A DNA stretch of 64,000 nucleotides from Octopus sinensis. Taxonomy: Eukaryota. The notes beneath the pieces were generated by a model. It was not told the origin of the DNA. It worked only from the letters and a program-made list of their open reading frames with translations, and searched no databases. Numbering within the stretch: the stretch's first letter is position 1; each line of letters opens with the position of its first letter. The translations under genes and the position numbers were made by a program. The stretch lies in the NCBI RefSeq assembly GCF_006345805.1, contig NC_042998.1, positions 40,920,001 to 40,984,000 of the forward strand, given 5' to 3'. Below are positions 244 to 63,342 of the stretch, one piece after another.

Positions 244-2214
244 ATGTATCAGTCTGCCAGAAGGGAAGCCAGGAGACAGGTCTATCTAGCCAGAGGGGAA
301 GCAGAGAAGGAAAAATTTGCCAATGTCCTGCGTCGTGAGGATGAAAGACTTGAGGTGTTTCGTGTTGCAAGACAGTGTGTGAGAGAGAATCGTGACGTGG
401 TAGGAGAGAAATGTGTTCGCAAGGAGGACGGTTCACTTGCACTTAATGAGGGTGCAAAGAGAGAGACTTGGAGACGCCACTATGATAGGTTGCTGAATGA
501 AGAAAATGAATGGGATAAAGAGAGTCTGCCGAATGTCGACCCAACAGAGGGACCAGCAATCCGAGTTAACAGTTCCTTAGTAGATAAGGCAATTAGAAGC
601 ATGAAAACAGGGAAAGCCCCAGGCCCATCAGGAATTACTGCAGAGATGCTCAAAATATCTGGTGGTGTCGGCTATAGCTTAGTCACCCGTATAGTTAACC
701 AGGTGATACACGAGGGGGTCATACCCAATGACTGGTGTAGCAGCATAATAGTCAACTGCTACAAAGGTAAAGGCGACGCCCTAGAGACAAATAACTACAG
801 GGGCATCAAGCTGCTGGATCAGGTAATGAAGGTTACGGAGAGGGTTGTAGCCGAACTAATTAGAGAGAGAGTTACCTTAGATGATATGCAGTTTGGGTTC
901 GTGCCAGGGAAAAGTACTACTGATGCTATATTCCTGGTAAGACAGCTGCAGGAGAAATACCTAGCCAAAGATAAGCCCTTGTACCTGGCTTTTGTTGACT
1001 TGGAGAAAGCCTTTGACAGGGTCCCCTGGTCCCTTATCTGGTGGTCAATGAGGAAACTAGGGATAGAAGAATGGTTGGTGAGAGCTGTGCAAGCCATGTA
1101 CAGAGACGCTGCTAGTAAGGTGAGGGTGGGCAACGAGTACAGTGAAGAATTCCGGGTAGAGGTTGGGGTCCACCAAGGTTCAGTCCTCAGTCCCCTCCTA
1201 TTTATCATAGTCCTCCAGGCAATAACGGAGGAATTCAAGACAGGTTGCCCCTGGGAGCTCCTCTATGCTGATGACCTTGCTCTAATTGCTGAGTCACTAT
1301 CAGAACTGGAGGAGAAGTTCCAGGTGTGGAAACAAGGATTAGAATCGAAGGGCCTTAGAATCAACCTAGCCAAAACCAAAGTTCTAATAAGTAGGAAGGT
1401 AGATCAATCACAAACGCCTTCAGGTAGATGGCCCTGCTCGATCTGTAAAAAAGGTGTAGGTAGAAACTCTATAAGATGCACCAAGTGTAAGCTATGGACA
1501 CATAAGAGGTGCAGCAATGTCAAAGGAAGGCTAACTAGGAAAATAGTTTTTGTCTGTGGCAAATGCTCAGGAGCAATAAACACTGGAAATATGCAGAGAC
1601 CAACTTCTGCCACGTTCCAGGGAGACAAACTAGAAGTAGTTGATAGCTTCCGCTACCTAGGAGACCAAGTCAGTAGCGGGGGTGGGTGTGCTGAAAGTGT
1701 AACTGCTAGAGTAAGAATAGCCTGGGCAAAGTTTAGAGAGCTCTTACCCCTGCTGGTGACAAAAGGCCTCTCGCTCAGAGTAAAAGGCAGACTGTATGAT
1801 GCATGTGTACGTACAGCCATGCTACATGGTAGTGAAACATGGGCCGTGACTGCTGAGGATATGCGTAAGCTCGCAAGAAATGAAGCCAGTATGCTCCGAT
1901 GGATGTGTAATGTCAGTGTTCATAATCGTCAGAGTGTAAGTTCCTTGAGAGAAAAGCTGAACCTAAGAAGCGTCAGTTGTGGCGTGCAAGAGAGACGGCT
2001 GCGCTGGTATGGTCATGTGACAAGAAAGGCTGAAGATAGTTGTGTGCAAAAGTGCTACACCCTAGCAGTGGAGGGAACCTGTGGAAGAGGTAGACCCAGG
2101 AAAACCTGGGACGAGGTGGTGAAGCACGACCTTCGAACTTTAGGTCTCACTAAGGAAATGTCTAGAGACCGAGACCTATGGAAGTATGCTGTGCATGAGA
2201 AGACCCGGCCATAA
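244..2214 (+). CDS. RTE-type reverse transcriptase ORF (656 aa, endonuclease-less) with an embedded C4HC3 zinc finger
   Basis: Motifs PGPSG, NYRGIKL, QFGF, FVDLEKAFDRV, GVHQGSVLSPLLF, LYADDL, GLRINLAKT, FRYLG and the RTE-like C-terminus RRLRWYGHV...GRGRPRKTW. Cys/His cluster at 1435-1566. Confidence 0.9.
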   Translation: MYQSARREARRQVYLARGEAEKEKFANVLRREDERLEVFRVARQCVRENRDVVGEKCVRKEDGSLALNEGAKRETWRRHYDRLLNEENEWDKESLPNVDPTEGPAIRVNSSLVDKAIRSMKTGKAPGPSGITAEMLKISGGVGYSLVTRIVNQVIHEGVIPNDWCSSIIVNCYKGKGDALETNNYRGIKLLDQVMKVTERVVAELIRERVTLDDMQFGFVPGKSTTDAIFLVRQLQEKYLAKDKPLYLAFVDLEKAFDRVPWSLIWWSMRKLGIEEWLVRAVQAMYRDAASKVRVGNEYSEEFRVEVGVHQGSVLSPLLFIIVLQAITEEFKTGCPWELLYADDLALIAESLSELEEKFQVWKQGLESKGLRINLAKTKVLISRKVDQSQTPSGRWPCSICKKGVGRNSIRCTKCKLWTHKRCSNVKGRLTRKIVFVCGKCSGAINTGNMQRPTSATFQGDKLEVVDSFRYLGDQVSSGGGCAESVTARVRIAWAKFRELLPLLVTKGLSLRVKGRLYDACVRTAMLHGSETWAVTAEDMRKLARNEASMLRWMCNVSVHNRQSVSSLREKLNLRSVSCGVQERRLRWYGHVTRKAEDSCVQKCYTLAVEGTCGRGRPRKTWDEVVKHDLRTLGLTKEMSRDRDLWKYAVHEKTRP

Positions 2215-9669: not shown

Positions 9670-10150
9670 AGCACGAGGATCAGAGGCATAAGGTGTTCCA
9701 AATTGTATTGTACCAGAGAGAATGAAGACATTATTATGGAGAAGTGTATACAGAATAATAGTTGTACACTTTCCCTTATTAACATGAAAATGAAAGAGGC
9801 AAGGAAATGCTACTACCAGAATTTATTAAATGAGGAGAATGCATGGGTGAAAGAGGACATACTCCAAATGGACTCAACGAAGGGACCAGCCTTTGATATT
9901 GATAGGCATGTTGTTGAAAGCAGAGTTAAGGAATGAAGGATAGAAAGAGAGAAAAAGAGACAGCTAAAGACCAGAGATAAATGGTAACATCCTAAAAGTA
10001 TCTGGAGAAATAGGTCATATACTAGCCACTCAAATAGTCAATTACACAATAGAGTGAGGTGTCATAACCAATAATTAGTAGATCAGTATCATCAATTTCT
10101 ACAAGGTTAAAGGAGATGCTATGAAGGAAAGTAATTACAGAAGCATTGAA
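9670..10150 (+). mobile_element. Decayed internal RTE fragment
   Basis: CTRENEDIIMEKC..YYQNLLNEENAWVKE..KGPAF..ILKVSGEIGH..KGDAMKESNYRSIEL aligns by eye to about aa 30-190 of the 244-2214 ORF. Confidence 0.8.
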
Positions 10151-10829
10151 TTGACTACTGACTGCTCTCTTCTTTGTTGTACTCTCATCTATCATTTGCC
10201 CTCTCTTCTGTCACTGTGCTTTCCTTCAATTTTACCTCTATTGCATCATGCCACCTGTATACCAAGGGATAGTATTGGATCTGTCAGTATTCAATCTCCT
10301 CTCACCATCACCCTTCTTTATTGTTATCCATCACTCTCATACAAATTTTCTTATCTATTGTTGATCTTTTTCATTCTCTTCTATCACACTTTCACTTTAC
10401 TCCTTCCATCACCTTGTTCCCTTGCTATCACTTTTTCCTCATCATGCCATCCATGCTGTTTTTCTATTCAGTCTCCTTACCAACATGTAGCTATCAATCA
10501 CAGTTTCACTTCCATTACTCCCTCCTCTATTACTTTCTTACCCCTGTCTATTTTTCTCATCTTATCCTCTTTTCTTTTATCCTAATTCTTCATGACTTCT
10601 TCAATTTACCCTCCTGATCCTATTACCTTGAATGAATGGAAGCAGCTTAGAGAATAAACTTGCTGAGGAAACAATCTCTCTGATACTAGTACTCTAATAA
10701 AATTCACCTAGTACACTCTGTAAAGGGTATTCAGCCATAGAATCCATGCTAAAAATTGAATATATGAGTGAGACATGGTCCCTGATCTGTCGACATGGGC
10801 AGTAACTCCAAATAAAAACTGACTTAGAC

Positions 10830-10885: not shown

Positions 10886-13800
10886 CTGGAGAAACCTTTA
10901 ATATTTTCTGGATCAAACGTCCATCTGAAGAAACATATTACTTTGAAATAGAATATATATAAAAAGAAATTTTTTAATCTAGTTACTGTTAGAGGTAAAT
11001 TTCTTCAAATTGATAGTCATGCCCTGTCTCTCAGTCAACCCAATGTAATTGTGGTCCTCAGTAGTTGCCTTGAAATATATTTCATCTTGCTCATTGCATG
11101 GTACTTGGAGATTTTATGCCATAAAATATTCATGTCCTTCTGAACAAATCAATAGAGATCATAATTAATGGTATGATCTCCTTAAAATCCTCTTGAATTT
11201 TAATTTGGTGGTATGCATTTCTGAGTTCAAAGTGAATGGTGGATTTAATGTTAGAGATAGCGCTAGGCTATTCTTATAATTAAGGTGTACCTTGTAATCA
11301 CTACAAATTTGTAATTTTCCATTTTAGCTTTCATACTATCACAAAAGGTGGCACCCACTTGCTACCACTAGGAGGAGCATGCTCTAATTGGTTCTGTTTA
11401 ATAATTTTTCCTAACCTTACAACTACAAGTGCAAAAAGATAATTCAGTGTGTTTTGAAATTTGAAATATGGAAGATGATATCTACATCTTTCTTTAAATT
11501 TAATTCTTAAGCAAACCAATATTGTCAACATTTGGCACAACGCAATTGACTTGTCTTGTGTTATCAATATTTAGTATATCACTTCCAACTAGACCATGAC
11601 TTTTATAACAGTTCACTACTACCACTGTTATAAAATTAAACTGAATACCTGTTTCTTGGGTTCCTTAAAAGAAATCAAGGTTTCGTTTATTGATCCCTGA
11701 AGTTGTCGATAACTTTTGAGAAGTTTTGGTTGGCCAATGATCATCCAATAATTTCTTAAAATTATCTTGCTTCTAGTATCTAATTGCATATCCAAACTGA
11801 CATTATTCAATTTAACTTAAGGTGGCGCTTTCTTTGTCTTGTAGCATAAACACATTTATTTCAGCACCAGACTTGTCATCATCAATATATAATATACTTT
11901 TCTTTTAAGTGCTACTAACTGAAAGTGGTTCTTTTTGTTAAATGATTTACATATCTTACTAAATGCAAGATATTTGCTTTAATAAATGCATGTTTATGAC
12001 TACAGGATTTGCATTTAAAAAATTTCTTTTTTGATATATGAGAAACATCAGCAATTTTTTCATCCTTCTTTATGAGAGATATTGATTCCTTTGAGAAACA
12101 ATCTCATTTCATGTTCTTGCATGAAGTTCACATATGCATGGAGTGACATTATTCCCAAATGCATTTTTTCTAATGTTCATGATCTGTGGGATGTTTGGTT
12201 CCTGTAGTATATGCTTCCAATGAAAGTCATTTGTATTTATTCTTCTTCAATATTTTGGTCATCTTGAACAAATTTATCAAACTCTTGAAGTTCCATTATG
12301 AAGTTGATAATAAAAAAGTTTACAATGGGCTAGCTACAAAACATCTTAACCATGCTCCAGTAAAGTCAGAATCAGTAAGCACCAATAGTACCTTACTGGC
12401 AATGCTATTTGTTCTGAGGTAAACAACTGGCAAAGGTGTGAACTTTCATATAACACATATATTATTCATGCATAGCAATGGGTTAATAGTGTCCTTACAG
12501 ACAACACCTCCACTTCTACACCCTCTACCTAACCCAATTCTTGACCAAATTAAATGCTGTTGGATTCATTGAAAAGAGCCAGCGATCCACTATATTTTGC
12601 AATATTATGATAGTAAATTATGTGTGTAAAAAAAAGGGATATGATATGGAAGAATATCACACAGTTGCAACTTCTTCTAAGCAGTATAGTTTCCTTATTT
12701 CTATATTATTTTTGTTTTAGTTGCATTTAAGTAAAAGATCTCAATGAGAGGAATCTAATTCTGTAAACCACAAGAAAATTGGTGCAGTAGAAAAAAAGGG
12801 GGGAAAAGTGCTCAAATCAGAGAGGAAGTAATGTCTAATATCATCTTTAAATCACCCAATCTCTGTTATTTTAAAAGATAATTTAGTAAAGTTAAGCTTT
12901 CTTTAAAAAACCCCAAAGGAGAGAAATCTAATACTGAAAGCTTACCTCAAGATTTGTGCCATAGAAAAACACTTACAGGGTAAAATTCAGTCAAATCAGA
13001 AAGGAAGTAAAGATTAAATTTATCCCTAAGCCATCATATCTTTGTTATTTAAAAAAAAAAAATCAATTTAATTAAGTGTACCTAACCATCATGAGAAACT
13101 AGTATTGAAAAGCATGTCAAAATTGGTACAAAGTTGGTATAGTACAAATACCAGAGTAGAGGGTAATCACTGGCGCATTAATCTATAATTATACTTGTTT
13201 GTAACAATATATACATGCTTACACACAAACAAACACTTGTACATATAAAATATACAATAGGATCTGAGCAAAGTGGTGATGGTCTGCATCTGCAATTAGT
13301 GAGCATAAACAATTAAAAAGAGAAAGAAATCAGGGGTTAATGTATCAGATATGAATCCTACCCTTTTTTTTTTTTTGTTTTATTCATTTTTTCCCCTCAA
13401 AATATTCTTCAGAATTCTATGTTTTGAACAATATTATAATTTTGCCCCTAAAACAGCTTTTCAAAATTTCAGACCCAGCCACCACACACATACACACACT
13501 CTTTCAAAGTTTTATGCTTTTTTCTGTTTTTGAAAATATTCTAGGTGTTTCACATGATAAAATATGAGGACTATGATAATTTGAAAAAGTAAAAAAAATA
13601 TTTTTTTAAAATTTTAACTTTTGCTCAAACACCTCTCTCTTAAAACATTCATATTAACATTCTGGGTGTTTTAAACTCAGCCACTGATTTCTGCGTGTGT
13701 GGATATTTGCTGAAGTAGAAGTTGAAATGAAGGCTGCTTCAATGTAACAACCAGAATTCTGAAAAATTATTTTTCTAGAATTTCATATTTTTATGTTATC

Positions 13801-19740: not shown

Positions 19741-20110
<370 letters not shown>

Positions 20111-20169
20111 TGATCCAGCATGGCCACAACCTCAAGGCTGAAACATATAAAAGAATAACAGAATATAAA

Positions 20170-20530
20170 TGTGTGCAAAGTACAAGAAATATTAATGCAG
20201 TATATGGGGATTGGACAATAAGCGTAAGGCAGTGTCAATGGTGGTTCCAGAAATCCCGAGCCATAAACTACAGCCTAGAAGACGAGCCTCATCCTGAAAG
20301 ATCTGTAGAACTCGACAAGGACACCCTGAAAACCCTGGTGGAACAAAATCTCATCGTAACTGTTGAGGAACTAGCAGAGAAGCTTGGATTTGGTCATTCA
20401 ACCATTCATTGAGACCTGTGTGCTATCGGAAAAGTCAGCAAATTGGGTCAATGGGTTCCTCACGAACTTTCCGAGTCTAATTGCATGCAGAGAGTGAATG
20501 TATGCTTTTCTTTGCTGTCACATCTCACCA
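20170..20530 (+). mobile_element. Mariner transposase N-terminal fragment
   Basis: RNINAVYGDWTISVRQCQWWFQK..SLEDEPHPERS..TVEELAEKLG..KLGQWVPHEL, which includes the mariner-diagnostic WVPHEL motif. Confidence 0.85.
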
Positions 20531-45402: not shown

Positions 45403-45495
45403 GCTGATCGTCCAGTTGTTAATGATCTGTTCAAAGATTTATCTGATGGATGCAATCTACTTTCACTGTTGGAAGTTTTAAGTGGCGAAACCCTA
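45403..45495 (+). CDS. DMD: Dystrophin exon (human exon 3 equivalent), CH1 domain: ADRPVVNDLFKDLSDGCNLLSLLEVLSGETL
   Basis: ttttcttttcag acceptor and gtaagt donor; 93 nt, phase 0-0; aligns to human [31 protein letters not shown]. Confidence 0.92.
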
Positions 45496-45676
45496 GTAAG
45501 TATATATGTGTGTTTTCATGAATTGTTATTCTAAGTTTCATGTTAACTAATTATTCAAACAAATCATTTCAATAATCTGTAATGTGAAACCCATAGTGAT
45601 GATCCAAGAAGCTTCAGCTTCTAAAAATTATTATATTTATAATATAGGTGTGTGTGTGTATATATATATATGTGTC

Positions 45677-46257
45677 TTGGCATCACTCAGCAAGACTTTT
45701 GTTAGCCACTCTCCAGCCATCTATTTAAAACTGTATACAGCTATGGTACAACCACACTTAGAATTCGCATCATCAGTTTGGAACCCCTATCTTGCTCAGA
45801 ACATTGACCTCCTGGAATCTGTTCAGAGACGTGCAACCAAACGCATACCCTCTATCAGACACCTACCATACTCTGAGCACCTTGTTTCCCTGGGCATGGA
45901 TTCACTGAAGCTCCGGCGTCTGGCAATGGACTTGGTAAACACCCACAAAGTTATCAACCACCTCACCAACAACAACACTGAACACCTTTTTGATCTTCAT
46001 GTATCTAACACATGTGGACATGCCTACAAAGTCAGAAAACAACACAGCTCCCATGACTTTCGGAAACATTTTTTCACGCTCAGAGTTGCTGAAGCATGGA
46101 ACAAACTGCCTGCGTCAGTTGTTGACTGCCATGACACTGCATCCTTTAAGGCCCTCATGCTTTCCGAAATCCGCCGAAACTACACCTGATTATACATACA
46201 CTTTAGATGAGTTGTAGTGCACCTGAGCACTGTATACAATGTTTTTATTATTATTAT
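45677..46257 (+). mobile_element. CR1-clade LINE 3' end
   Basis: LKLYTAMVQPHLEFASSVWNPY..LESVQRRATK..LRRLAMDL..RKHFFTLRVAEAWNKLP followed by a (TTA)n tail. Confidence 0.85.
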
Positions 46258-47759
46258 ATATAAAATAAATGATTAAGAAGTTTGTTTTGTAGTCATGATT
46301 TTGTGTCTTTTTTTTTTTTCTTAGTATGCTTTTCACCATGGCTTGACATTAATTTAAGGTTTATGAGTGAAATTGTGCCGCTGGAAATCGAAATCCCAAC
46401 AGATGGATTGTACATGTAATTCAAAAAGCCATCACCCTTTTCAGTTACTTTGTCAAACTGATTTTTGTCCAAATATTATGTGAAAAGTACAAGCATCTAT
46501 GGAATACTCAGCCACTTACACTTGTACTCAATAAATTACACTTGTACTGAATAAATCATTCAGTTGTTTAAGTAACTAGAATAATTATTGTCAAAACTGG
46601 CAGAGAATTCAGTTACTTCAGGAGAGAGAAATGTTAAACTCTGCTGAATGTCCTTCAGAAATGACACTTTAAAATAAATGAATGAATGAAGTTTTCTCTT
46701 ATGAGAAGTGTACTAACATTTTTCTCAATTAGTCTTCTCGAAGTACCATATATCTAACTGTTGCAATTTGTTGAGATAATTTCAAAGTAGAACTGTTGAA
46801 ATTAAAACAGAACATATGAATACTTTTTCTGTTATTCAATTTTTATTTTTAATTTCCAGTTAAAGCGAGAACTAGACCTTAAAACTACAAAAGAAAAAAA
46901 AATTTTGCTATCTACCTTTGTAGATAACAATGCAAGGGGGATAATTATTTTAAAAATGCTAAATTATTCTCCCTTATTAGATGGATGTCGGCTTTTCATA
47001 AAAAGAAAAAGAAAAAGAAACAATTCTACTAATTGCTCAAGAAAAAACTGAAGTTAAATACTTTACTGAAAAAACCTAAATTTTAATATTTTTCTTAAAA
47101 ACATAGATTTAAACCAATGAAAAGTTACCAGTTTTGAACAGACTTCCTAATAGCATTCTTTTGATAATACTGGTGAAATACCATTTACATGACTATGTGA
47201 TAACTCCTGTATACTGTAAACTAGATAAAAATGTATATGCCCATTCTCAAAATAAACCGTCAGTGTGGAATTTTGTTTTATAACTAAGATATATATCTAG
47301 AATATTAGGTGTATAAAACTAGTTAACTTTGTTAACTCCAATGAAGTTTGATAAAGCTGTTAACTGGATTTTTTTTTTGTTTTTGTGTAGTATTTTCTGC
47401 TTATAATGGATTATAACGTAAACTTATGTTATATATTTGTGTATTTTTCTCTCACTTTACAATATATTCATTTTTCTTTTTATTGCCATTCAATGTTTAT
47501 CATAATTTCATGGGGCTGGTGGTTAATATGCAGAAGCTGTTTTTACTCTGATTGAACGCAACTGTTTGCTGATGGTTGGTGTTGGGTTGAGACGTTTTGT
47601 TTCTATTTTTGATGAAGTGTTTACTTTGGTGGATCTTTTTAAAGATTTAGCTGGCGCAGTGAATAGTCCACCACTTGAGATTAATGTATAGTATCATTTC
47701 CATAAGTCCACAATATTTCTAGCTTATGGGTTAACTGTTATAGCTAACTTCAGGCTTAA

Positions 47760-48180
47760 CTCTTCTTAACTGTTTCTCTTTCAGTCCAATGATAACTCTC
47801 TTTTTACTGTATTCCCTTCCCATATCTTCATTACCTTCCTCCCTTTCTTCTCACTCCTTTCCTTCTTTCTTTCACTTCTCTCCCCTTTCTTTCTGTTTCC
47901 TTTCTTTCACACCCCATTTCTCACCACTGTTCCTCTTTCATTTTTCATTCATTAAATCTATCTTGCTAAATTTTTCCCACTGTCTTATCTATTTTTTTCT
48001 CTTCTAATCTCTTCTTTTATTCCTGCTCCCTCACTCCAGCTCCCCCCCTCTCTCTCTTTCTTCTTCCAGCCCACCCTTCTCTCTTTCCCCATGTATCCCA
48101 TACTTCTTACTCTTTTCTGTCCCTCCCTTTACCCCATTCTTCTCTTTCCCATTCCACCACTCTCCATCATCTTTCTTCTC
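47760..48180. repeat. About 400-bp pyrimidine-rich (C/T) low-complexity tract
   Basis: Strongly C/T-biased on the + strand; directly visible. Confidence 0.85.
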
Positions 48181-48454
48181 TACTCCTGAATGAAGCAGCT
48201 TCTACCTGCTAGAAATACCAGTGAAGCCTCTTTCAAACCATATTTTGTCATTTTGACTGACATAAGGAACGACATATTGGATAATGTAATTCCTGGTTGA
48301 AAGGAAAAGATGTGTTCATTGCCTGAATTCATTTGATTGTATATACAGCTGGTTGGTGCTGATCTGGGGCTAAACAACAATTCCCTGCTCCCCCTCTCTC
48401 TCATCTACTTCTTACTCTCTTTCACATCCCATGTCTCTTCTCTGCACTCTTTCT

Positions 48455-48496
48455 ATGTGTGTGTGTGTGTCTCTCTCTCTCCCTCTCTCTCTCTCC

Positions 48497-48528
<32 letters not shown>

Positions 48529-48647
48529 GAATAACATATAGCCTATGGCTAAAATGTCTTTTGTGCTAGATCACCGGCAATAATAATTTATTTTATCGCC
48601 TTTTTATTATGTTTACATATATCTATATATATATATACACACATACA

Positions 48648-48687
<40 letters not shown>

Positions 48688-48788
48688 CATACATATATCT
48701 ATATATATATACATATATCTATATATATATACATATATCTATATATTTACATACAAATATATATATATATACACATACATATACAAAA

Positions 48789-48842
<54 letters not shown>

Positions 48843-48860
48843 TATATATATATATATATA
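48455..48860. repeat. Compound microsatellite (GT)n(CT)n(TA)n(CA)n
   Basis: Directly visible. Confidence 0.95.
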
Positions 48861-49211
48861 TCATCATCATCGTTTAGCGTCCGTTTTCCATGCTAGCATG
48901 GGTTGGACGGGTCAACTGGGGTCTGTGAAGCTGGAAGGCTTCGTCAGGCCCAGTCAGATCTGGCAGTGTTTCTACGGCTGGATGCCCTTCCTAACGCCAA
49001 CCACTCCACGAGTGTACTGGGTGTTTTTTACGTGCCACCTGCACAAGTGCCAGACAGAGCTGGCGAACGGCCACGAACGGATGGTGCTTTTACGTGTCAC
49101 CGGCACGGGGCCAGGCGATGCTGGCAACGGACACGAACGGATGGTGCTTTTACGTGCCACCGACACGGGGCCAGACAGAGCTGGCAACCGGCCACGAACG
49201 GACGGTGCTTT
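48860..49211 (-). mobile_element. Young RTE 3' UTR fragment with three 60-62-bp units, flanked by (TA)n
   Basis: Near-identical reverse complement of 52800-53034 and 3749-3921; CpGs retained. Confidence 0.9.
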
Positions 49212-49224
49212 ATATATATATATA

Positions 49225-49440
49225 TAATATATATAATCACTTGTTTCAGTCATTAGACTGCATATATGTTGGGGCACCACTGCCTTGAAGAATTTTTAAT
49301 TGAATGAATTAACCCCCAGAACCATTTTTTTTAAAGCCTGTTACTTATTCTATTGGTCTTTATTGCTGAACATTGAAGTTATAGGGATATAAACACACTT
49401 ATACCAATTGTCAAGTGGTAGTAGGACACACACACACAGA
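49225..49440 (-). mobile_element. SINE 3' half fragment
   Basis: Reverse complement contains GACCAATAGAATAAGTA..TGACTGAAACAAGT. A related 3' end lies at 36770-36822 and a head fragment at about 50400-50500. Confidence 0.55.
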
Positions 49441-49444
49441 TATA

Positions 49445-50333
49445 TGAGGTAGTGTCAAAATGTTTTTGGATTAGTTCTGTAGCATGCCAATAAATGGCAC
49501 AACACAGTTGCATGCACAGTGAGAGCTAGCAGTGACTTTCATGAGGCAGTGTGCCAAGTGACATTGCTGTGTTTACTTCGCAAGTTGTGCCATGTATGCT
49601 GTAGTCTGTGATTTTGTCATGGACAGGAACAAAGAGCCAACATGAAATTTTGCATTAAATTTGGGAAGTTTGCTACAGACATTAAGCATGCTTTGGCTAG
49701 GTTACAGCGAGAAGGCAATCAGTTGTACACAATGTTTTAAGTGGCAAGGGCACTTAAAAAGCAGAAAAACATCCTTGGAATACAATGAATAATCTGGAAG
49801 ACCTGCCACATGCGTCACCCTCAGAAATGTGGTATTGTGCATCAAGAACTCATTCCCCAGAGTCAGACTGCCAATTGAGAGTTCTTCTGCGATTGTTTGA
49901 AACATTTGAGGGAGGACATTCAGGGAAAGCAACCAGATTGGTGGAGCACAAAGAACTGGATTCTTCATAACAACAATGCACCCTGTCACCAAGCTCTCCT
50001 TACTTGTAAGTTTCTCGCCAAATCAACATAGTTTAGCTTCCGCACCCTATTCGCCAGATAGAGCACCTGCATATTTCCATCTCTTCCCCAAGATGAAAAT
50101 GCAGCTCAAAGGTTGCCATTTTAACACCATTGTCGAGACCCAGGAGTGAATCACAGAAGGTCCTCAACTCGTTTACGGAAAATAACTTCCAAGCCAGATT
50201 CCAAAAGTAGCAGGAACACTGGGATTAGTGTATTGCTGCACAAAATGACTATTTTGATAGAGATGATGTTAAAACTTAGGTAAATAAGTTATTTATTTAT
50301 TTATTAGTCCAGGAACCTTTTGATACCACATCA
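49445..50333 (+). mobile_element. Internally deleted mariner (DD34D-type) element with both TIRs
   Basis: TIRs TGAGGTAGTGTCAAAATGTTTTTGGATTA and TAGTCCAGGAACCTTTTGATACCACATCA. Peptides QRANMKFCIK, WILHNNNAPCH, PYSPDRAPAYFHLFPKMK. Confidence 0.85.
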
Positions 50334-52260
50334 TGTATATTTATATATATATATAGTAGTAAGAGAATAGAGGAATTTTGATTATCCCCACTATAAATAT
50401 ATATATATATATATATATATACTCACAGGACTGAGGCTACAGTAAAAGATTCTTGTCTAAGGTACCATGTGGTTGGGATGCAAGCTTTTTTACACACAGT
50501 CATGCCTACATACATATACACACCTCTTAATTACTGTTTTCATTTACTTCAAATATTTTCATTTTAACCAGAATCTTACAAAAGAAGAAAGAAAAGCAAC
50601 TGGAATTTTGAATTTTAATGCAGTAATGCATTGTATCTTTGTGACAGTTATTTTGTGCCCCCTTAACGTAGCCATGTGTTTTTGTGTCCCCTAATACAGC
50701 CACAGGTGTTGTTGCCTCCTTAATACAGTCATGTTTTGTTGTAACCTAACACAGCCACGTGTGTTGCTGGTTCTCTGATATAGTAATTTATGTTGTATCC
50801 TTGTGCAAGGTAAAGATCTTGGCTTGCTCCAATTTACCTTACTGACAAAAAAGCACTAATACTTTACAATTGAATGATCAACAGTAAAAAGAGTATCCCT
50901 GAATGTAAATATAACTATTCTCACATCACCTGCACATTCTTGACTGTTTGATACAAAAGAAGTCAGTTACATGCATTCAAGCCCTCATTTCAAAATTCTT
51001 CAACTACCTTCCATTATTAAGCTGTGCTTTTCCATTGTTTTTGCTCTTGCTGTTGAAAGAGTCTTCTATTCACTAAATATGACCTGTCCAATAAGAAAGA
51101 ACATGACTTGTAGCTAATATGTATGGGCTTTTAAAATAGAAAAGTTGTAAGTTTGATTAAAATTTCACACATTTGATATGAAAATAGTTTATGTGCACTG
51201 CTGTTTCTCTTTAGGTAAATCCTCCACCCCAGAAAAAGTGGTGCAGAGATATTTAACTTTCAGTCACCTTACTAATTTGCTCTGAGACTCAAACCTACTT
51301 CAATACAGTGTACTGTTATATAATTGGAATTGTTTCCTCATCTGATTGCATCACTTGCACATTAGCATTAAAAAAAAATACTTCATAAATATAACCCTAA
51401 TTCATAAAGCACTGTGCTTTCTCTGCTTATCCTACCACTGTCATAATGACCTCTTTTCTTCAGAATCCCCCTCCCCACTGTCGTTCCATTTGAACAAGCC
51501 CATTTTACTCAGTTCTCACTTCAAATAGTTTTTCTGTTCTAAAAGTTTGTAATAGTTTTGCGGTTCTAAAATCTTAGTTGTTTACTGAGAGACTGGCTTT
51601 TTGGTAGTACTTTGTTATCTCTTTGTAATAAGCTGCACTCATCTCAGATGTAATGTGCTCTTTGCTGACCTACAATCAGTGCTCTTCTCCTTCTGTCATG
51701 ACAATAATGTAATAATAGTAAAACACAAACTATTTTAATAGTTATTTTGCCCCAAGTCAACCCTGACTGAGCAGACTCGAGATCAAAAGCAATCCAGCTG
51801 TAATCATTTCACCTTTTTAGGAGTGTCCCAAACTATTTTATCCTTTGTGTCCTTCTGTTTTTTATATTTGGGTTTGAGGGACTACTTTTTCTATCAAGTT
51901 GAGTGACTGCATAGAGGCTCTCATTGGTTTAATTCTGATAAGTATTTAGTTAATCTGTTTATGTACTGTATTTAAATATTTTTACTTTAACTAATAAGTT
52001 CACAACTTCTAAACAAATATTTAACATTTAAGTTGCCAGTGTGTGAATCCTTTTAAAAATACTTTGTTAAAAGTGTAAAATAAACCCAAATAAAAAAAAA
52101 CAACAACAAAAGAACAGAAAAACTATTTGAAGTGAGAACTGAGTAAAATGGGCTTGTTCAAATGGAACAACAGTGGGGAGGGGGATTCTGAAGAAAAGAG
52201 GTCATTATGATAGTGGTAGGATAAGCAGAGAAAGCACAGTGCTTTATGAATTAGGGTTAA

Positions 52261-53030
52261 AATCAAACCAAATCAACATCAGTGGAAATTGCAGCTGTGG
52301 TTAAGCGAACCATCCGATCATTTGTCCATTGCCAGCCTCGCCTGGCCCCCGTGCCGTTGGCACGTAAAAGCACCATCCCCTTGTGTCCATTGCCAGCCTC
52401 GCCTGGCCCCCGTGCTGGTAGCGCGTAAAAGCACCATCCGCTCATGTCCGTTGCCAGCCTCGCCTGGCCCCTGTGCCGGTAGCACGTAAAAGCACCATCC
52501 GCTCATGTCTGTTGCCAGCCTCGCCTGGCCCCCGTGCCGGTAGCACGTAAAAGCACCATCCGCTCGTGTCCGTTGCCAGCCTCGCCTCGCCCCCGTGCCG
52601 GTAGCACGTAAAAGCACCATCCGCTCGTGTCCGTTGCCAGCCTCGCCTGGCCCTCGTGCCGTTGGCACGTAAAAGCACCATCTGCTCGTGTCCGTTGCCA
52701 GCCTCACCTGGCCCCTGTGCCGGTAGCACGTAAAAGCACCATCCGTTCGTGTCCGTTGCCAGCCTCGCCTGGCCCCCGTGCCAGTGACACGAAAAAAACA
52801 CCATCCGTTCGTGGCCGTTTACCAGCTCTGTCTGGCACCTGTGCAGGTGGCATGTAAAATGCACCCACTACACTCACGGAGTGGTTGGTGTTAGGAAGGG
52901 CATCCAGCCGTAGAAACACTGCCAAATCTGACTGGGCCTGATGAAGCCTTCCGGCTTCACAGACCCCAGTTAAACTGTCCAACCCATGCTAGCATGGAAA
53001 ACGGACGCTAAATGATGATGATGATGATGA

Positions 53031-53034
<4 letters not shown>
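52261..53034 (+). mobile_element. Young RTE 3' UTR fragment with nine 61-bp units and an (ATG)n tail
   Basis: Begins with the AATCAAACCAAATCAACATCAGTGGAA module also found in the 2.3-3.4 kb UTR; ends in the same tail as 3749-3921. Confidence 0.9.
52309..52862 (+). repeat. 61-bp GC-rich minisatellite, 9 copies
   Basis: ACCATC starts at 52309, 52372, 52433, 52494, 52555, 52616, 52677, 52738 and 52800. Confidence 0.95.

Positions 53035-53094
<60 letters not shown>
53033..53094. repeat. (AT)n microsatellite between the RTE tail and the Helitron 3' end
   Basis: Directly visible. Confidence 0.97.
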
Positions 53095-53098
<4 letters not shown>

Positions 53099-53099
53099 A

Positions 53100-54363
53100 C
53101 TAGCAGAGATCCCCGGCATTGCTTAGGATTAAAATGGCATAGTTTGTATATATACATTACAGTTAGTTTGAAGCAAGTGACATGAGAAAGTGCTGCATTG
53201 ACAACAAAACATTTGTGGAGTAAATGTTGGGCTAATATGACTAAGCAACATGCTATGCATCTGTTTGGAGTATTTCAGGCCCTAACCTGTCATGGAAAAT
53301 TGTGGGGTGGTGCTTATGTAATTTTTGAATGCACTGCAAAGATGTCAGTGGATATACTCTCTTTTGCAGCAGTTGGCACTGTCTAACATGACCCATCATC
53401 TGAAATTTTGACACCTCCTTTAGGTTTGTTGTCCTGCATCACTCATAAAGTAAATTTGGAGGAACTGTGGTTGTTCATTTGTGGGTAACAGGGAACCAAT
53501 GAGGTGATAGACTTACCCTTGAACTTTGACGTCAGCATAAATTCATGTTTAACCATCTTCTTAGATGCAGTAAACGATGTCATTTGAAATGCAGAGTTGT
53601 ATTGTCTGATATTGTTCAGAAAATCCTTTGACTGGGTGGAAGTGCCTTCTAGAAGATCCATAAGAGGTTGAGAAGGAGCTGGTACTGCTGGCAATGTTAC
53701 CTGACCACCTGAGCAGCACATACCATTTGTTTCATTTGAAAATTTTAAACCTCTACAGAAACAACAATTTGTTTAGCACACCAATTTAGACAGTTATCAT
53801 TTTTGTAAGAATGGGATGGAACATATCTGAAAACAGCTTCAGGAGTTGTGAAGAACAAATTTGTATGTAGTCTCTTTCTGAGAGCTATTCTATTGGACCT
53901 CTGTCTAATCATTAAAACATCGATTTAATGATCTGGCATTAAGTACTGCAGCATGCGTTTGCTGATCTTGGAGAAGTCTCATCTCCCTTCTCTCTCTTGA
54001 GACTCCATCTGACATGCTGCAGCATGCCTTTGCTAATCTTGAGAAAATCTCATCTCGCTTCTGTCTTCAGACTCTCACCTTCAGTTTTCTACACTCCTCC
54101 TTGCTTCATACTTGTTTTTGGAGAGATTACATCTTTTCTTTGGGATATTTTTTCAATATTGTAAACAAAAAATTATGAACGTAGAAAAAATTGTACATTA
54201 ATCCCTATTTTTGTAAGCAGTTGTATGTATGTAGTATGCTTTTATTTCTGTATGCAGTATAAATTAACCAAATAGAAGCACATGTATGAACTACTAATTT
54301 AATGGTAAATGCTACAATAATTATTATAGATAAATTTTTTAATATATATTTATCAAGCACATG
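53100..54363 (-). mobile_element. Internally deleted, decayed Helitron (3' terminus plus N-terminal pseudo-ORF)
   Basis: Minus-strand 3' end CCTAAGCAATGCCGGGGATCTCTG-CTAG-T, homologous to 21154-21182. Pseudo-ORF CCFCRGLKFSNETNGMCCSGGQVTLP..FLNNIRQYNSAFQMTSF..KVQG*VYHLIGSLLP..PQFLQIYF. The 5' boundary is uncertain and may include the palindrome arm. Confidence 0.82.
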
Positions 54364-54838
54364 AATAAATGAATAATTTACATCCTAATGTGAACAACAT
54401 TACACGTCAGCAACTTTCCATCTTTATGGCCACCACAGCAGAATGGTGTGTTAGTGTATGTGTTGACTGACATAACGAACAGCTGGAGGTGAAACTCTTT
54501 GACAAAAAACAATTTTACCGTTCAATTACCTGTTAATAACTATTGCAACAGTTGCAAGGTATTTAGTTACATATTTCCCCTTAAATTAACATTAAAAGTT
54601 CAAGGGTAAATGTTAATTTAAGGGGAAATATGTAACTAAATACCTTGCAACTGTTGCAATAGTTATTAACAGGTAATTGAACGGTAAAATTGTTTTTTGT
54701 CAAAGAGTTTCACCTCCAGCTGTTCGTTATGTCAGTCAACACATACACTAACACACCATTCTGCTGTGGTGGCCATAAAGATGGAAAGTTGCTGACGTGT
54801 AATGTTGTTCACATTAGGATGTAAATTATTCATTTATT
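54364..54838. repeat. Perfect inverted repeat: 230-bp arms (54364-54593, 54609-54838) with a 15-nt loop
   Basis: Manual base-by-base comparison found no mismatches between the arms; loop AAAAGTTCAAGGGTA. Confidence 0.97.
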
Positions 54839-55710
54839 TCAAATATAATAGAAATTAGATGATCTTAATGCTATCATATTAGAATTAAAAGTAAAAGAAT
54901 GAAAGTGAAACAATATTATAGCCTTAACACATGAAAGACTGGCAGTTGGCTATGTGTGCAAGTCTCCTATGTGTCACCAGCGCTGTCCAAAAGAAAAGGC
55001 TGCTGCTTTAGAGCTGATACAGCTTGGCATCAGTCATTTCAAGTATTGCTCTCAGAACACAAGCACCCAGAGAGATACAACAAGGTATTATGTCTGATTC
55101 TGTAACAGTCCTTCCAATTGACAGTTTGCAAGTGGAATATTTTTGTTAACTTGAATGGATGAATAAAAGTTAACTTCACCTCAGCAAGATTTGAACACAG
55201 ACCACAATGATTTGGAACAGAATGCCACCAGGCATTCTATTCAATGCCAGTTTGCTATTTTAATGTATCCTGAAATTATCTTTGATAAGTAAACGTTTAG
55301 TTTTACAGAATAACATCTATTTGTGAAATTTTCTATAATGCATCTTTCATAAATAAATTTGGCTAAATTATTTTAATTATAATTTCATCACTTTTTAAAA
55401 GTATTTTCTTGAAAATATGAAGGAACTGAAACTAAATTAGAATTTCTTAAGTTAATATTGCAAAACTTCCTACTTAAATCCCATTTTTCTATTAAGTTGC
55501 TTTAACCCAATTTAGTCGCTTATTCTTGCCTTTCTTTGAGAATGTAGCACTCCTACACAAAACTGACTTTTACTGGTTCAAGGTTGTTCTTAAATCCCAC
55601 CAGGACTGTCTTCACTTGAGACATTTTTTTTATTAAGCAAATAAAATAAATTAAAATGTGCCCTTTTTTCTTTAGAAAGGTAACGTGAATGATTTTGTTT
55701 TTTTAAACAG

Positions 55711-55791
55711 AAAAGAGAAAGAGGCTGTTTGCGGGTTCATCACATCAATAATGTTAATCGTGCCTTATATATTCTTGAAAAAAATTATAAT
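55711..55791 (+). CDS. DMD: Dystrophin exon (human exon 4 equivalent): KRERGCLRVHHINNVNRALYILEKNYN
   Basis: ttttaaacag acceptor and gtaagt donor; 81 nt, phase 0-0; matches PKEKGSTRVHALNNVNKALRVLQNNN. Confidence 0.92.
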
Positions 55792-56988
55792 GTAAGTAAT
55801 TATATTTAGCTATACATTTTCCTGATGTTGACATAACTAAATATTTCTAACAACTTTAATTCTCCAATTTTACATTATTTCTGTTCTTTAATTTGTGAAT
55901 TTCCATTTTTTATGATCTTACAATGAAAGCCTATTGTTTTATAACTTGTATTGGTAGCATTTAGACATTGTTAATTGATATTAATATGGAACACACACAG
56001 ACGCATAATCTTGCTTATATTCACCCTCGACTGTGTTCACATTATCCATCTCTGGCTAGTTGCCTATATACTGCCTATATACAGCATATACTGGGATGGA
56101 ATGGAATGGATACTGATACATTTGTTTTGGAAAATTGTACCATTCTTTTCTACAATCTAAACTTAAGATAGTTCAGTTGTAATTTTAAGTAAAATGATCT
56201 TCCTGCTATTTGCTATTCTAATGCATTTAGAATTTTGATGTACTGACATTCAACTGTTAAGTTAAAAACTATGGGCTGCTCACATGGGGTGTTAATAAAT
56301 TCTGCCAGTTTGGTGAGGGACTTTATGAAAGTCAAGTGGCTAAAATGTGAATGGCAAAAAAAGTTCTGATAACTGCTATTTCTATTAAGTAAGGGCTTTC
56401 AAAATCACTAAGCCATCTGTTGAAATAATTGTGTTATCAAATCTCCTTCAATATGCTTCGGACAGCTTAGAATAAGAGGCATATTTAAGTCCATAAGTTT
56501 AAAAAATGTGCTCAAATATTACATGGAAGTGACAAGAATACTTATCTGACCAATTGGCTAACTGGACATTTCAGGAAAGCCTATGTAGAGTATTTAACCT
56601 ATAAGTTCTTAAAAGTTTAATCAGCTATATATGTAGCTATGGCTGTTCAAATGCTATAAGAAATGGTTTCTATGTATATAAAAAGCAAGTTATATGAAAC
56701 ATGACTGTAAGTGAGAACAATTGATTTGGGGTCAAATTTTACAATCTATTGGGTATGTAATAATAATTTATTGAGTGCATATTGAGAAAATAACCTGACA
56801 TGTATTGGATATGCTAGGAGAAAAATGCTGTGATGGAATCTATGTGTGGTCAAAATTGCTCATGGAATATGAGATTGCTTAGAATTAATATGTATGGAGA
56901 CATGTTTTCATTTCCCTTTTACTACTGATATATATCTAATATATTCATAACAGTAAACCATGACTTTGTTTTGTTTTATTATTTCCAG

Positions 56989-57081
56989 ATAAAACTTGTA
57001 AATATTAGTAGTAATGATATTGTGGATGGCAACTGTAAATTGATTCTGGGTTTGGTATGGAGCATTATTGTTCATTGGCAG
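56989..57081 (+). CDS. DMD: Dystrophin exon (human exon 5 equivalent): [31 protein letters not shown]
   Basis: atttccag acceptor and gtaact donor; 93 nt, phase 0-0. The HWQ-VK junction is typical of dystrophin/utrophin rather than spectrin, nesprin or plakin CH domains. Confidence 0.95.
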
Positions 57082-57249
57082 GTAACTACTTCTCTACTAA
57101 TTCTTAGATGTTTTCTTGTTGATTTGTAATTGATTTAGTATCTTTATTTTCTTGCAAAAGAATTTCTGACTACTGACATAAGTCTTATAAGTTCAAACTA
57201 AAATCAGTGAAATACCTAAAGATTAAATATACAGGATCAAATATAATAT

Positions 57250-59192: not shown

Positions 59193-59284
59193 GTCAAAGA
59201 TGTAATGAAAGATGCCATGGGAGAACTGCAACAATCAAACTTGGAACAAATGTTATTAGAATGGTGTAAAGAAATCACTAAAGA
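59193..59284 (+). CDS. DMD: Dystrophin exon (first part of human exon 6): VKDVMKDAMGELQQSNLEQMLLEWCKEITK(D)
   Basis: tttgtag acceptor and gtatgt donor; 92 nt, phase 0-2; matches [30 protein letters not shown]. Confidence 0.92.
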
Positions 59285-62845: not shown

Positions 62846-63088
62846 ACTGCATATAGTTTTATTCCTGAAAAATAAATGGTTATTAAAAGAAAAATACCCT
62901 TTGATTGAATACTCAATAATTACAGATTGATGTCAAAGAAACTAATTGAATATATGAATAGTGGAATAAATGCAATGTTTAATTGAAGGTGTGAGAGTAA
63001 TAAGTAATGAATAAATCAAGGATATTATTTTTTCGGGTGACATTAGTTGTTAACTAATAATCTAATATATATTAATTTTGTTTTTCAG

Positions 63089-63169
63089 CTATGATAAAGT
63101 TGAATTAAAAAACTTTACAACAAGCTGGAAGGATGGTTTAGCATTTAATGCATTAATACATAAACACCG
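63089..63169 (+). CDS. DMD: Dystrophin exon (second part of human exon 6), CH2: (D)[26 protein letters not shown](R)
   Basis: tttttcag acceptor and gtaagt donor; 81 nt, phase 2-2; matches NFTTSWSDGLALNALIHSHR. The gene continues beyond the window. Confidence 0.93.
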
Positions 63170-63342
63170 GTAAGTCAAACTTCTTTCAGTTTAGTTAATG
63201 ACTAAATGTCTGTTACAAGGTTCCACTCCAGCAATTATCTACAGCAATTAGAATAAAATCAATATTGATTAGGTTTCATATTTCTAGCTTTTTGCTTCAA
63301 ATTGAAATGCAGACCAAAATGACTGAAATCATTTAAAGAAAA

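What the first reader, a model, noticed from the sequence alone, without database searches (positions are those of the whole stretch)
54364..54838. Perfect 230-bp fold-back palindrome inside a dystrophin intron
Seen: two 230-bp arms with no mismatches and only a 15-nt spacer, ending about 870 nt upstream of the exon at 55711. The adjoining Helitron is full of stops and frameshifts, so the arms are either much younger than their surroundings or homogenised by arm-to-arm conversion. Known: near-perfect long palindromes extrude cruciforms and are unstable, and when transcribed give long dsRNA that ADAR and Dicer can act on; coleoid cephalopods show extensive A-to-I editing. Inference: the dystrophin pre-mRNA carries a 230-bp perfect hairpin that could be hyper-edited, diced or affect splicing of the next exon.
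Basis: partly seen in the sequence, partly recalled or inferred. Interest (0 to 1): 0.8.

Follow-up and report, generated by a model that had tools for sequence, protein, structure and literature searches.

The report
Perfect hairpin palindrome in octopus dystrophin intron
A 475-bp stretch of an octopus dystrophin-type intron really is a flawless fold-back repeat, but it looks like one young example of a hairpin-forming DNA class already known to be common in octopus genomes, with no sign of a function of its own.

Summary
Arms 54364-54593 and 54609-54838 are 230/230 complementary around a 15-nt spacer, and pairing stops exactly at both outer ends.

The context also holds. The palindrome lies in a 10.2-kb intron (45496-55710) of a + strand gene with dystrophin/utrophin-type calponin-homology exons, 872 nt before exon 55711-55791. 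The window shares transposon families with Octopus genomes.

It is not part of the neighbouring Helitron, whose homology to an O. bimaculoides copy ends at 54207. It has no coding capacity, no Rfam membership and no target-site duplication longer than a hidden TA.

No second copy was found, but that search had almost no power. An obvious TIR transposon in the same intron also found no copy.

Similar hairpins with 11-17-nt loops occur in O. vulgaris and O. bimaculoides samples. Published work already reports exceptional dsRNA potential and hyper-editing in octopus, and no siRNA pathway in molluscs.

Best reading (0.38): a recent in-situ inverted duplication by template switching, functionally passive, and a likely ADAR substrate in the pre-mRNA. 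Rivals are a TA-targeting palindromic MITE (0.30) and an assembly or polishing artefact (0.15). Editing is plausible but untested, dicing is unlikely, and a splicing effect is unsupported.

The parts
54364..54593 (.). Left arm of the palindrome (230 nt, 34% GC)
   Evidence: It is 100% reverse-complementary to 54609-54838. It is single-copy within the window. The longest stop-free reading is 47 codons.
54594..54608 (.). 15-nt non-palindromic spacer AAAAGTTCAAGGGTA, the apical loop of the hairpin
54609..54838 (.). Right arm of the palindrome (230 nt)
45496..55710 (+). Host intron (10,215 nt, 37% GC) of the dystrophin-type gene. The palindrome starts 8,868 nt after the GTAAGT donor and ends 872 nt before the acceptor.
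45403..45495 (+). Upstream CH-domain exon ([31 protein letters not shown]), followed by the donor GTAAGT
55711..55791 (+). Downstream CH-domain exon (KRERGCLRVHHINNVNRALYILEKNYN). Acceptor is ...aaacag, donor is gtaagt.
53051..54207 (-). Neighbouring degraded Helitron fragment. It is context only and is not part of the palindrome: its 5' boundary lies 157 bp from the left arm.
   Evidence: Frameshifted Helitron N-terminal motifs are seen. The best protein hit is O. bimaculoides LOC106877661. Nucleotide identity to L001 12620-13693 is 85.6-86.9% and stops at window 54207.

Best explanation
This is a genuine, evolutionarily very young inverted duplication of ordinary intronic DNA. One arm, probably the left, is native sequence. 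The other arm was written as its reverse complement in a single replication or repair template-switch (fold-back) event. In that event the nascent strand copied back along about 230 nt and then returned to the original template, leaving a 15-nt turn-around loop.

The element has no coding capacity or RNA-gene function of its own.

Because it sits in the sense strand of a dystrophin-type intron, every pre-mRNA would carry a 230-bp perfect duplex. In an octopus the expected fate of such a duplex is promiscuous A-to-I hyper-editing by ADAR, followed by normal intron turnover. Processing into siRNAs is not expected.

At the DNA level, long identical arms with a spacer under 20 nt put the locus in the range known to stall forks and break. 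It should therefore be polymorphic and short-lived.

Shown here: the structure, the gene context and the separation from the Helitron. Inferred: the mode of origin, transcription, editing and instability.
For: - The arms are perfect with a tiny loop, and complementarity ends abruptly at both ends.
- No direct target-site duplication longer than 2 bp exists in any register within +/-12 nt of the ends.
- The arm has no IR/DR-type sub-repeats or other transposon hallmarks.
- Arm GC (34%) and CpG o/e (0.46) match the surrounding intron (37%, 0.40).
- A 26-nt stretch that spans the left flank/arm junction (54355-54380) has a 21/26 direct match 79 bp upstream (54276-54301). Empirical p is about 0.015-0.05. 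This is as expected if flank and left arm were always contiguous.
- The centre (54585-54616) has a 23/32 match in the right flank (p about 0.03).
- No second copy was found in the window, in about 110 kb of Octopus and other fetched DNA, in two metagenome scans and one viral k-mer scan, or among 1.84 billion protein representatives.
- Template switching is documented to create perfect hairpins in one step, preferentially seen in introns (PMC10710096).
- For the RNA fate: octopus has the highest hyper-editing signal, and 0.44% of random 50-mers have a >95% identical inverted partner within 2 kb (PMC5625713). The stem carries 152 adenosines on the + strand, and only 17 have the disfavoured 5' G.
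- For DNA fragility: inverted Alus with a 12-bp spacer stall forks in eukaryotic cells (PMC7999016).
Against: - Documented template-switch events are mostly tens of bp, so 230 nt would be long.
- The junction-spanning similarities are only marginally significant in AT-rich DNA, and four comparisons were made.
- The absence of other copies carries almost no weight. The unmistakable TIR transposon at 51392-52259 also has no copy in the same sample.
- A TA sits 2 bp inside each outer end (AA-TA-AATG...CATT-TA-TT). This fits insertion of a TA-targeting element into a palindromic AATATT site.
- No ancestral one-arm state could be examined.
- No reads, RNA-seq or small-RNA data were available.
Confidence: 0.38

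Rival explanations
1. It is a palindromic miniature transposon (MITE or foldback-like). In this reading it is a deletion derivative of a TA-targeting DNA transposon with about 230-bp terminal inverted repeats, reduced to TIR-loop-TIR, that recently inserted into an AATATT site of the intron. The RNA and DNA consequences would be the same as in the main explanation.
For: - The structure is that of a whole-length inverted repeat with no coding capacity.
- A TA lies 2 bp inside each end, and the extra AA/TT would follow from a palindromic AT-rich target.
- The same intron holds a clearly transposon-like, TA-flanked 868-bp element with 149-nt TIRs at 99% identity (51392-52259). Young long-TIR elements therefore exist in this genome.
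- Insertions of such elements are, from general knowledge, much commoner than de novo 230-bp inverted duplications.
- Palindromic Harbinger MITEs are the main hyper-edited repeat in frog (PMC5625713).
- Other hairpins with similar loops occur in O. vulgaris and O. bimaculoides DNA.
Against: - There is no visible non-palindromic TSD. The TA model needs 2 extra paired bases at each end.
- No second copy was found anywhere searched, although power was low.
- The termini do not resemble the neighbouring TIR element or any other sequence in the window.
- The arm has no transposase-binding-type sub-repeats.
- A junction-spanning similarity to upstream flank would not be expected for an insertion.
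Confidence: 0.3
2. It is an assembly, gap-filling or polishing artefact. In this reading the real chromosome has one arm, or two diverged arms. The perfect fold-back was created by chimeric fold-back molecules or reads, or by consensus polishing that homogenised the arms.
For: - Fold-back artefact reads are documented, at about 0.6% of ONT genomic reads and more after whole-genome amplification (PMC12870357 and PMC6218980).
- Perfect identity is what polishing with multi-mapping short reads would produce.
- No independent assembly or read set could be consulted. All exact-ORF look-ups were empty.
Against: - A fold-back read continues into the reverse complement of the left flank. Here the right arm is followed by unique sequence that runs on colinearly to the next four dystrophin-type exons.
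- The arms are only 230 nt, far shorter than read-scale fold-backs.
- The 64-kb window has no N or gap.
- The spacer is not a sequencing adapter, judged from knowledge of adapter sequences and not by a search.
- Older, mismatched hairpins of the same architecture exist in two other Octopus assemblies, which argues that the class is biological.
Confidence: 0.15
3. It is a selected hairpin RNA element. Candidates are a precursor of small RNAs (hpRNA or miRNA cluster) or a cis-acting dsRNA that recruits ADAR or modulates splicing of the dystrophin transcript. Its arms would be kept identical by arm-to-arm conversion.
For: - The stem is perfect next to a decayed Helitron.
- It lies in a sense intron, so transcription is likely.
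- Sub-threshold Rfam hits to long-hairpin plant MIR families reach E values down to 3e-14.
Against: - All Rfam hits are below the gathering scores (77 against 100 bits at best). They occur on both strands at the hairpin centre, so they reflect generic hairpin shape.
- Molluscs lack a siRNA pathway (PMC12479628).
- The element is 872 nt from the nearest splice site.
- Perfect, mismatch-free 230-bp stems are not the form of processed miRNA or hpRNA genes, from general knowledge.
- No conservation evidence could be obtained.
Confidence: 0.05

Closest known systems
Template-switch mutations that create perfect hairpins in one step (Loytynoja and Goldman model; PMC5453318, PMC8794818, PMC10710096)
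   Same: A reverse-complement copy lies directly beside its source. Pairing is perfect from the moment of origin. There is a small loop and no target-site duplication. The location is intronic.
   Different: Described events are mostly tens of bp, whereas this one is 230 nt. The ancestral state, which defines such an event, could not be examined here.
Palindromic MITEs, such as the roughly 200-bp palindromic Harbinger repeat of Xenopus that is heavily edited (PMC5625713)
   Same: It is a short non-coding element whose whole length folds on itself into tight dsRNA. It would be an ADAR target without needing a second inverted copy nearby.
   Different: Here no family (second copy) and no clear TSD were found. 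Harbinger elements make TWA duplications, which are absent.
Human palindromic AT-rich repeats (PATRR11, 22, 17, 8), several of them intronic (PMC7999016)
   Same: It is a near-perfect palindrome of several hundred bp, single-locus, lying in an intron, and expected to form a hairpin or cruciform and to be unstable and polymorphic.
   Different: PATRRs are more than 90% AT and have essentially no spacer. This element is 66% AT with a 15-nt spacer. No rearrangement data exist for it.
Inverted SINE/Alu pairs as ADAR hyper-editing substrates
   Same: Intramolecular long dsRNA forms within a pre-mRNA intron. The same intron also contains such a pair (48860-49091 / 52794-53025, 92%).
   Different: Those duplexes come from two separate insertions that are kilobases apart and mismatched. 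Here the arms are adjacent and identical.

Membership tests
MITE / foldback-type DNA transposon | Terminal inverted repeats and a small, non-coding body | tested here: met
   The arms are 230 nt at 100% identity. The longest stop-free stretch is 47 codons, and it has no homolog among 1.84e9 protein representatives.
MITE / foldback-type DNA transposon | Target-site duplication flanking the TIRs | tested here: inconclusive
   There is no direct repeat longer than 2 bp in any register within +/-12 nt. Only palindromic TA or AT dinucleotides are hidden inside the arms, with the TA 2 bp in from the ends.
MITE / foldback-type DNA transposon | Multiple dispersed copies in the genome | tested here: inconclusive
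   No copy was found in the 64-kb window, in about 110 kb of fetched loci, or in the metagenome and viral k-mer scans. A bona fide TIR element in the same intron also had none, so the test lacks power. A whole-genome search is not possible with these tools.
Helitron (as part of the adjoining element) | Sequence continuity with other copies of the same Helitron family | tested here: not met
   Homology to the O. bimaculoides copy (L001 12620-13693, 85.6-86.9%) ends at window 54207, which is 157 bp before the palindrome. In L001 that boundary abuts a preceding Helitron fragment and a GT microsatellite.
Known RNA families (miRNA or hpRNA precursors, Rfam 15) | Score at or above the family gathering threshold | tested here: not met
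   The best hit is MIR7993 at 77.3 bits against a threshold of 100. Hits occur on both strands and are centred on the loop.
Template-switch (fold-back) inverted duplication | Perfect reverse-complement copy adjacent to its source, with no TSD | tested here: met
Template-switch (fold-back) inverted duplication | Ancestral or allelic state with a single arm in place | not testable with these tools
   No orthologous or allelic sequence could be retrieved. All exact-protein look-ups failed, and the dystrophin gene models were not returned. There are only weak internal hints.
PATRR-like fragile palindrome | Near-perfect palindrome of several hundred bp, more than 90% AT, without a spacer | tested here: not met
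   Length and symmetry are met (475 bp). AT content is 66% and there is a 15-nt spacer.
ADAR hyper-editing substrate | Long, nearly perfect intramolecular dsRNA within a transcribed region | tested here: met
   The predicted stem is 230 bp. It lies on the sense strand of an intron flanked by in-frame CH-domain exons. Transcription itself was not tested.
ADAR hyper-editing substrate | Clusters of A-to-G mismatches in RNA reads | not testable with these tools
Dystrophin/utrophin gene (host) | N-terminal tandem calponin-homology actin-binding domain closest to dystrophin or utrophin | tested here: met
   Five + strand exons were mapped. The PDB best hits are dystrophin 1dxx at 2.1e-18 and utrophin at 2.9e-18. 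Pfam CH scores 1e-9. The best database hits are named dystrophin in molluscs and annelids. The rest of the gene lies outside the window.

The most novel reading that the evidence does not exclude
Octopus genomes may continually generate short-loop hairpin palindromes in situ through a lineage-typical fold-back replication or repair process, rather than through transposition. The loops seen here are 11-17 nt, in all three examples. This 100%-identical element would be the newest product caught in a dystrophin intron. Such a process would be a direct source of the exceptional dsRNA load and hyper-editing signal of octopus transcriptomes.
Probability: 0.12. Interest if true: 0.65.

Novelty: new member of a known kind. 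Interest (0 to 1): 0.27.

Why it matters
If real, the locus is a clean natural substrate for two questions.

1. How does an octopus cell deal with a 230-bp perfect intramolecular dsRNA in an abundant muscle and neuronal pre-mRNA? This bears on ADAR hyper-editing in an animal without a siRNA pathway.
2. How long does a perfect short-spacer palindrome survive in a metazoan germ line? This concerns polymorphism, centre-break deletions and fork stalling inside a very large gene.

Its value is as a well-defined test case. Intronic hairpin-forming repeats and their editing in octopus are already described in general terms, so it is not a new kind of element.

Tried and rejected
**Part of the Helitron: rejected.** Homology with an O. 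bimaculoides copy ends 157 bp away from the palindrome.

**Known RNA family: rejected.** Only sub-threshold, strand-symmetric hairpin hits were found.

**Coding sequence: rejected.**
- The longest stop-free stretch is 47 codons.
- It has no homolog among 1.84e9 protein representatives.
- Pfam found nothing on six neighbouring ORFs; only the CH-exon query in that call matched, to the CH domain.

**IR/DR-type Tc1-like TIR architecture: no support.** The arm has no significant internal direct repeats.

**Larger diverged inverted repeat around a converted core: rejected.** The flanks show no inverted similarity.

**Search for independent copies or assemblies: nothing useful came back.**
- Exact look-ups of 14 window ORFs all failed.
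- Two metagenome scans and one viral 22-mer scan were empty.
They returned only proteins up to about 1.7x the query length.
- No cephalopod dystrophin model was returned, so the orthologous intron could not be fetched.
- About 110 kb of fetched loci held no arm-like sequence. They came from O. bimaculoides, O. sinensis, O. vulgaris and two ENA contigs.

**Viral hairpin termini** (parvovirus-like ITRs) were considered. They were dropped because no viral ORF lies nearby and the size does not fit.

Full report
**Observation**

There are two 230-nt arms (54364-54593 and 54609-54838) with no mismatch. The spacer is 15 nt, AAAAGTTCAAGGGTA, and is not self-complementary.

Complementarity ends abruptly. 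The seven positions immediately outside each arm do not pair. The flanks show no weaker inverted similarity.

Folded as RNA, the + strand gives a single uninterrupted stem of 230-231 bp with a 15-nt loop. The energy is -408 kcal/mol, against -107 +/- 6 for dinucleotide shuffles (z about -50).

The arm occurs nowhere else in the 64-kb window. The window contains no N.

**Context**

Five + strand exons encode a calponin-homology actin-binding domain. They lie at 45403-45495, 55711-55791, about 56986-57084, about 59193-59283 and about 63086-63170.

- The closest solved structures are dystrophin (1dxx, 2.1e-18) and utrophin.
- Pfam CH scores 1e-9.
- The best database relatives are mollusc and annelid proteins named dystrophin, at 65-72% identity.

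The palindrome lies in the 10,215-nt intron 45496-55710. It starts 8,868 nt after the GTAAGT donor and ends 872 nt before the acceptor of exon 55711.

The organism is an octopod.
- Window 53051-54207 is 85.6-86.9% identical in nucleotides to O. bimaculoides chromosome CM046601.1.
- A SINE piece (48860-49010) is 99.3% identical to O. sinensis DNA.
- LINE and SINE families are shared with O. sinensis and O. vulgaris loci.

**Relation to the Helitron**

The - strand between about 53100 and 54207 carries a frameshifted, stop-ridden Helitron N-terminal region. It shows the CCxxG...IRxYN...GSLLP motifs. The best protein hit is an O. bimaculoides LOC.

A second, unannotated copy in the O. bimaculoides locus aligns up to window 54207 and no further. 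In that locus the boundary directly follows another Helitron fragment and a GT microsatellite. That is what a true 5' end in a tandem Helitron array looks like.

The palindrome begins 157 bp beyond this boundary, so it is not part of that element.

**What it is not**

- It encodes nothing. The longest stop-free stretch is 47 codons. That stretch has no hit among 1.84 billion protein representatives.
- It belongs to no Rfam family. The only matches are sub-threshold hits to long-hairpin plant MIR models, on both strands, centred on the loop.
- The arm has no significant internal direct repeats of the IR/DR kind.

**Origin**

There is no direct target-site duplication longer than 2 bp in any register. 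That excludes the usual signatures of hAT, Mutator, P, PIF/Harbinger, piggyBac and most other cut-and-paste families (family TSD lengths from general knowledge).

What remains for a transposon reading is a TA lying 2 bp inside each end (AA-TA-AATG...CATT-TA-TT). This would fit a TA-targeting element inserted into a palindromic AATATT site.

That reading gains some plausibility from the same intron. At 51392-52259 lies an 868-bp, TA-flanked element with 149-nt TIRs at 99% identity, which is clearly a young DNA transposon derivative.

Against the transposon reading, two short similarities suggest that the arms are native to the locus.
- A 26-nt stretch straddling the left flank/arm junction has a 21/26 direct match 79 bp upstream. 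Empirical p is 0.015-0.05.
- The hairpin centre has a 23/32 match 40 nt beyond the right arm (p about 0.03).

Both are marginal in AT-rich DNA.

The arm's GC and CpG depletion equal those of the intron.

No other copy of the arm was found in anything I could search. The TIR element just mentioned also has no copy in that sample, so this negative result has essentially no power.

I therefore rank the explanations as follows:
- in-situ template-switch duplication, 0.38
- palindromic MITE, 0.30
- artefact, 0.15
- selected RNA element, 0.05

The remainder is left unassigned. Template switching is documented to create perfect hairpins in one event, often in introns (PMC10710096). Described events are usually much shorter, however.

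**Artefact**

Fold-back reads exist, at about 0.6% of ONT genomic reads and almost none in HiFi (PMC12870357). Such a read continues into the reverse complement of the left flank.

Here the right arm is followed by unique sequence that proceeds colinearly to four more exons. The arms are far shorter than read-scale fold-backs.

Polishing could have made slightly different arms identical. Only reads can settle this.

**The class is common in Octopus**

In about 80 kb of non-redundant DNA from other Octopus assemblies I found two further simple hairpins.
- O. vulgaris L003 18626-18901 has about 130-nt arms at 85-88% identity. It has a 16-nt spacer, which folds to an 11-nt loop.
- O. bimaculoides L001 19851-20046 has a stem of about 90 bp that is nearly perfect, with a 17-nt loop.

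Porath et al. reported that 0.44% of random 50-mers in O. bimaculoides have a >95% identical inverted partner within 2 kb. That is exceptionally high among the 19 species they compared, and the species has the strongest hyper-editing signal (PMC5625713).

The present element is thus the youngest-looking member of a known, abundant class.

The same intron also holds an inverted SINE pair (48860-49091 / 52794-53025, 92%), which is another dsRNA-forming partner set.

**Likely behaviour**

This section is inferred. If the intron is transcribed, the 230-bp duplex is an ideal ADAR substrate. The stem carries 152 adenosines on the + strand, and only 17 are preceded by the disfavoured G (the neighbour preference is from general knowledge).

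Dicing into siRNAs is unlikely. Molluscs, including O. bimaculoides, lack a siRNA-type Dicer and Ago and show no endo-siRNA signature (PMC12479628).

Nothing suggests an effect on splicing. The hairpin is 872 nt from the acceptor.

At the DNA level, identical arms with a spacer under 20 nt fall in the regime where inverted Alus (12-bp spacer) stall forks in eukaryotic cells. Human intronic PATRRs break in the same regime (PMC7999016). The locus is therefore expected to be polymorphic and short-lived.

Without conversion, zero mismatches in 460 paired positions implies an age of roughly 1-6 My or less for assumed substitution rates of 1-5e-9 per site per year. The rates are assumed.

**Verdict**

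All functional claims remain untested.

It is a new member of a known kind and of modest interest. It is mainly useful as a clean test case for dsRNA handling and palindrome stability in octopus.

Noticed in passing
window 51392-52259: An 868-bp non-coding element with 149-nt terminal inverted repeats at 99% identity. It begins TAACCCTAATTCATAAAGCAC and is bounded by TA on both sides. It looks like a young non-autonomous TA-targeting DNA transposon in the same dystrophin-type intron. No other copy was found in the window or in the fetched loci.
   Followed up: partly
window 48860-49091 and 52794-53025 (with 60-61-bp tandem arrays at 49026-49211 and 52323-52865): Two copies of a SINE-like repeat carrying a GC-rich minisatellite of about 61 bp lie in inverted orientation 3.7 kb apart, at 92% complementarity over 232 nt. 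This is a second potential long dsRNA in the same intron. A piece of the repeat is 99.3% identical to O. sinensis DNA (L002 3983-4133).
   Followed up: partly
L003 18626-18901 (O. vulgaris OX597841.1) and L001 19851-20046 (O. bimaculoides CM046601.1): Two further simple hairpin palindromes in unrelated Octopus loci. Their arms are about 130 nt (85-88%) and about 90 nt (nearly perfect), and their apical loops are 11 and 17 nt. Together with the 15-nt loop here, the similar loop size across three unrelated sequences is unexplained.
   Followed up: partly
L001 10001-13693: O. bimaculoides carries Helitron fragments head to tail. An N-terminal fragment lies at 10001-10702, a Pif1 2B-domain fragment at 11534-12013, then a GT microsatellite, then a new copy starting at 12620. 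This tandem arrangement helps place the Helitron 5' end at window 54207.
   Followed up: partly
window 244-2214: An uninterrupted 656-aa reverse-transcriptase ORF of a LINE lies on the + strand. It is 75-78% identical in nucleotides to copies in O. sinensis and O. vulgaris loci, and it may be a recently active element.
   Followed up: no
window 20002-20412: An ORF with a mariner-type transposase N-terminal (HTH-like) region, ...WTISVRQCQWWFQKSR...EPHPERS..., sits next to a long (GT/CA)n-rich stretch. Its ends were not mapped.
   Followed up: no
(tool behaviour): All three word-indexed protein searches returned only proteins up to about 1.7x the query length. No cephalopod dystrophin was returned. 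For this reason the orthologous intron could not be retrieved.
   Followed up: no
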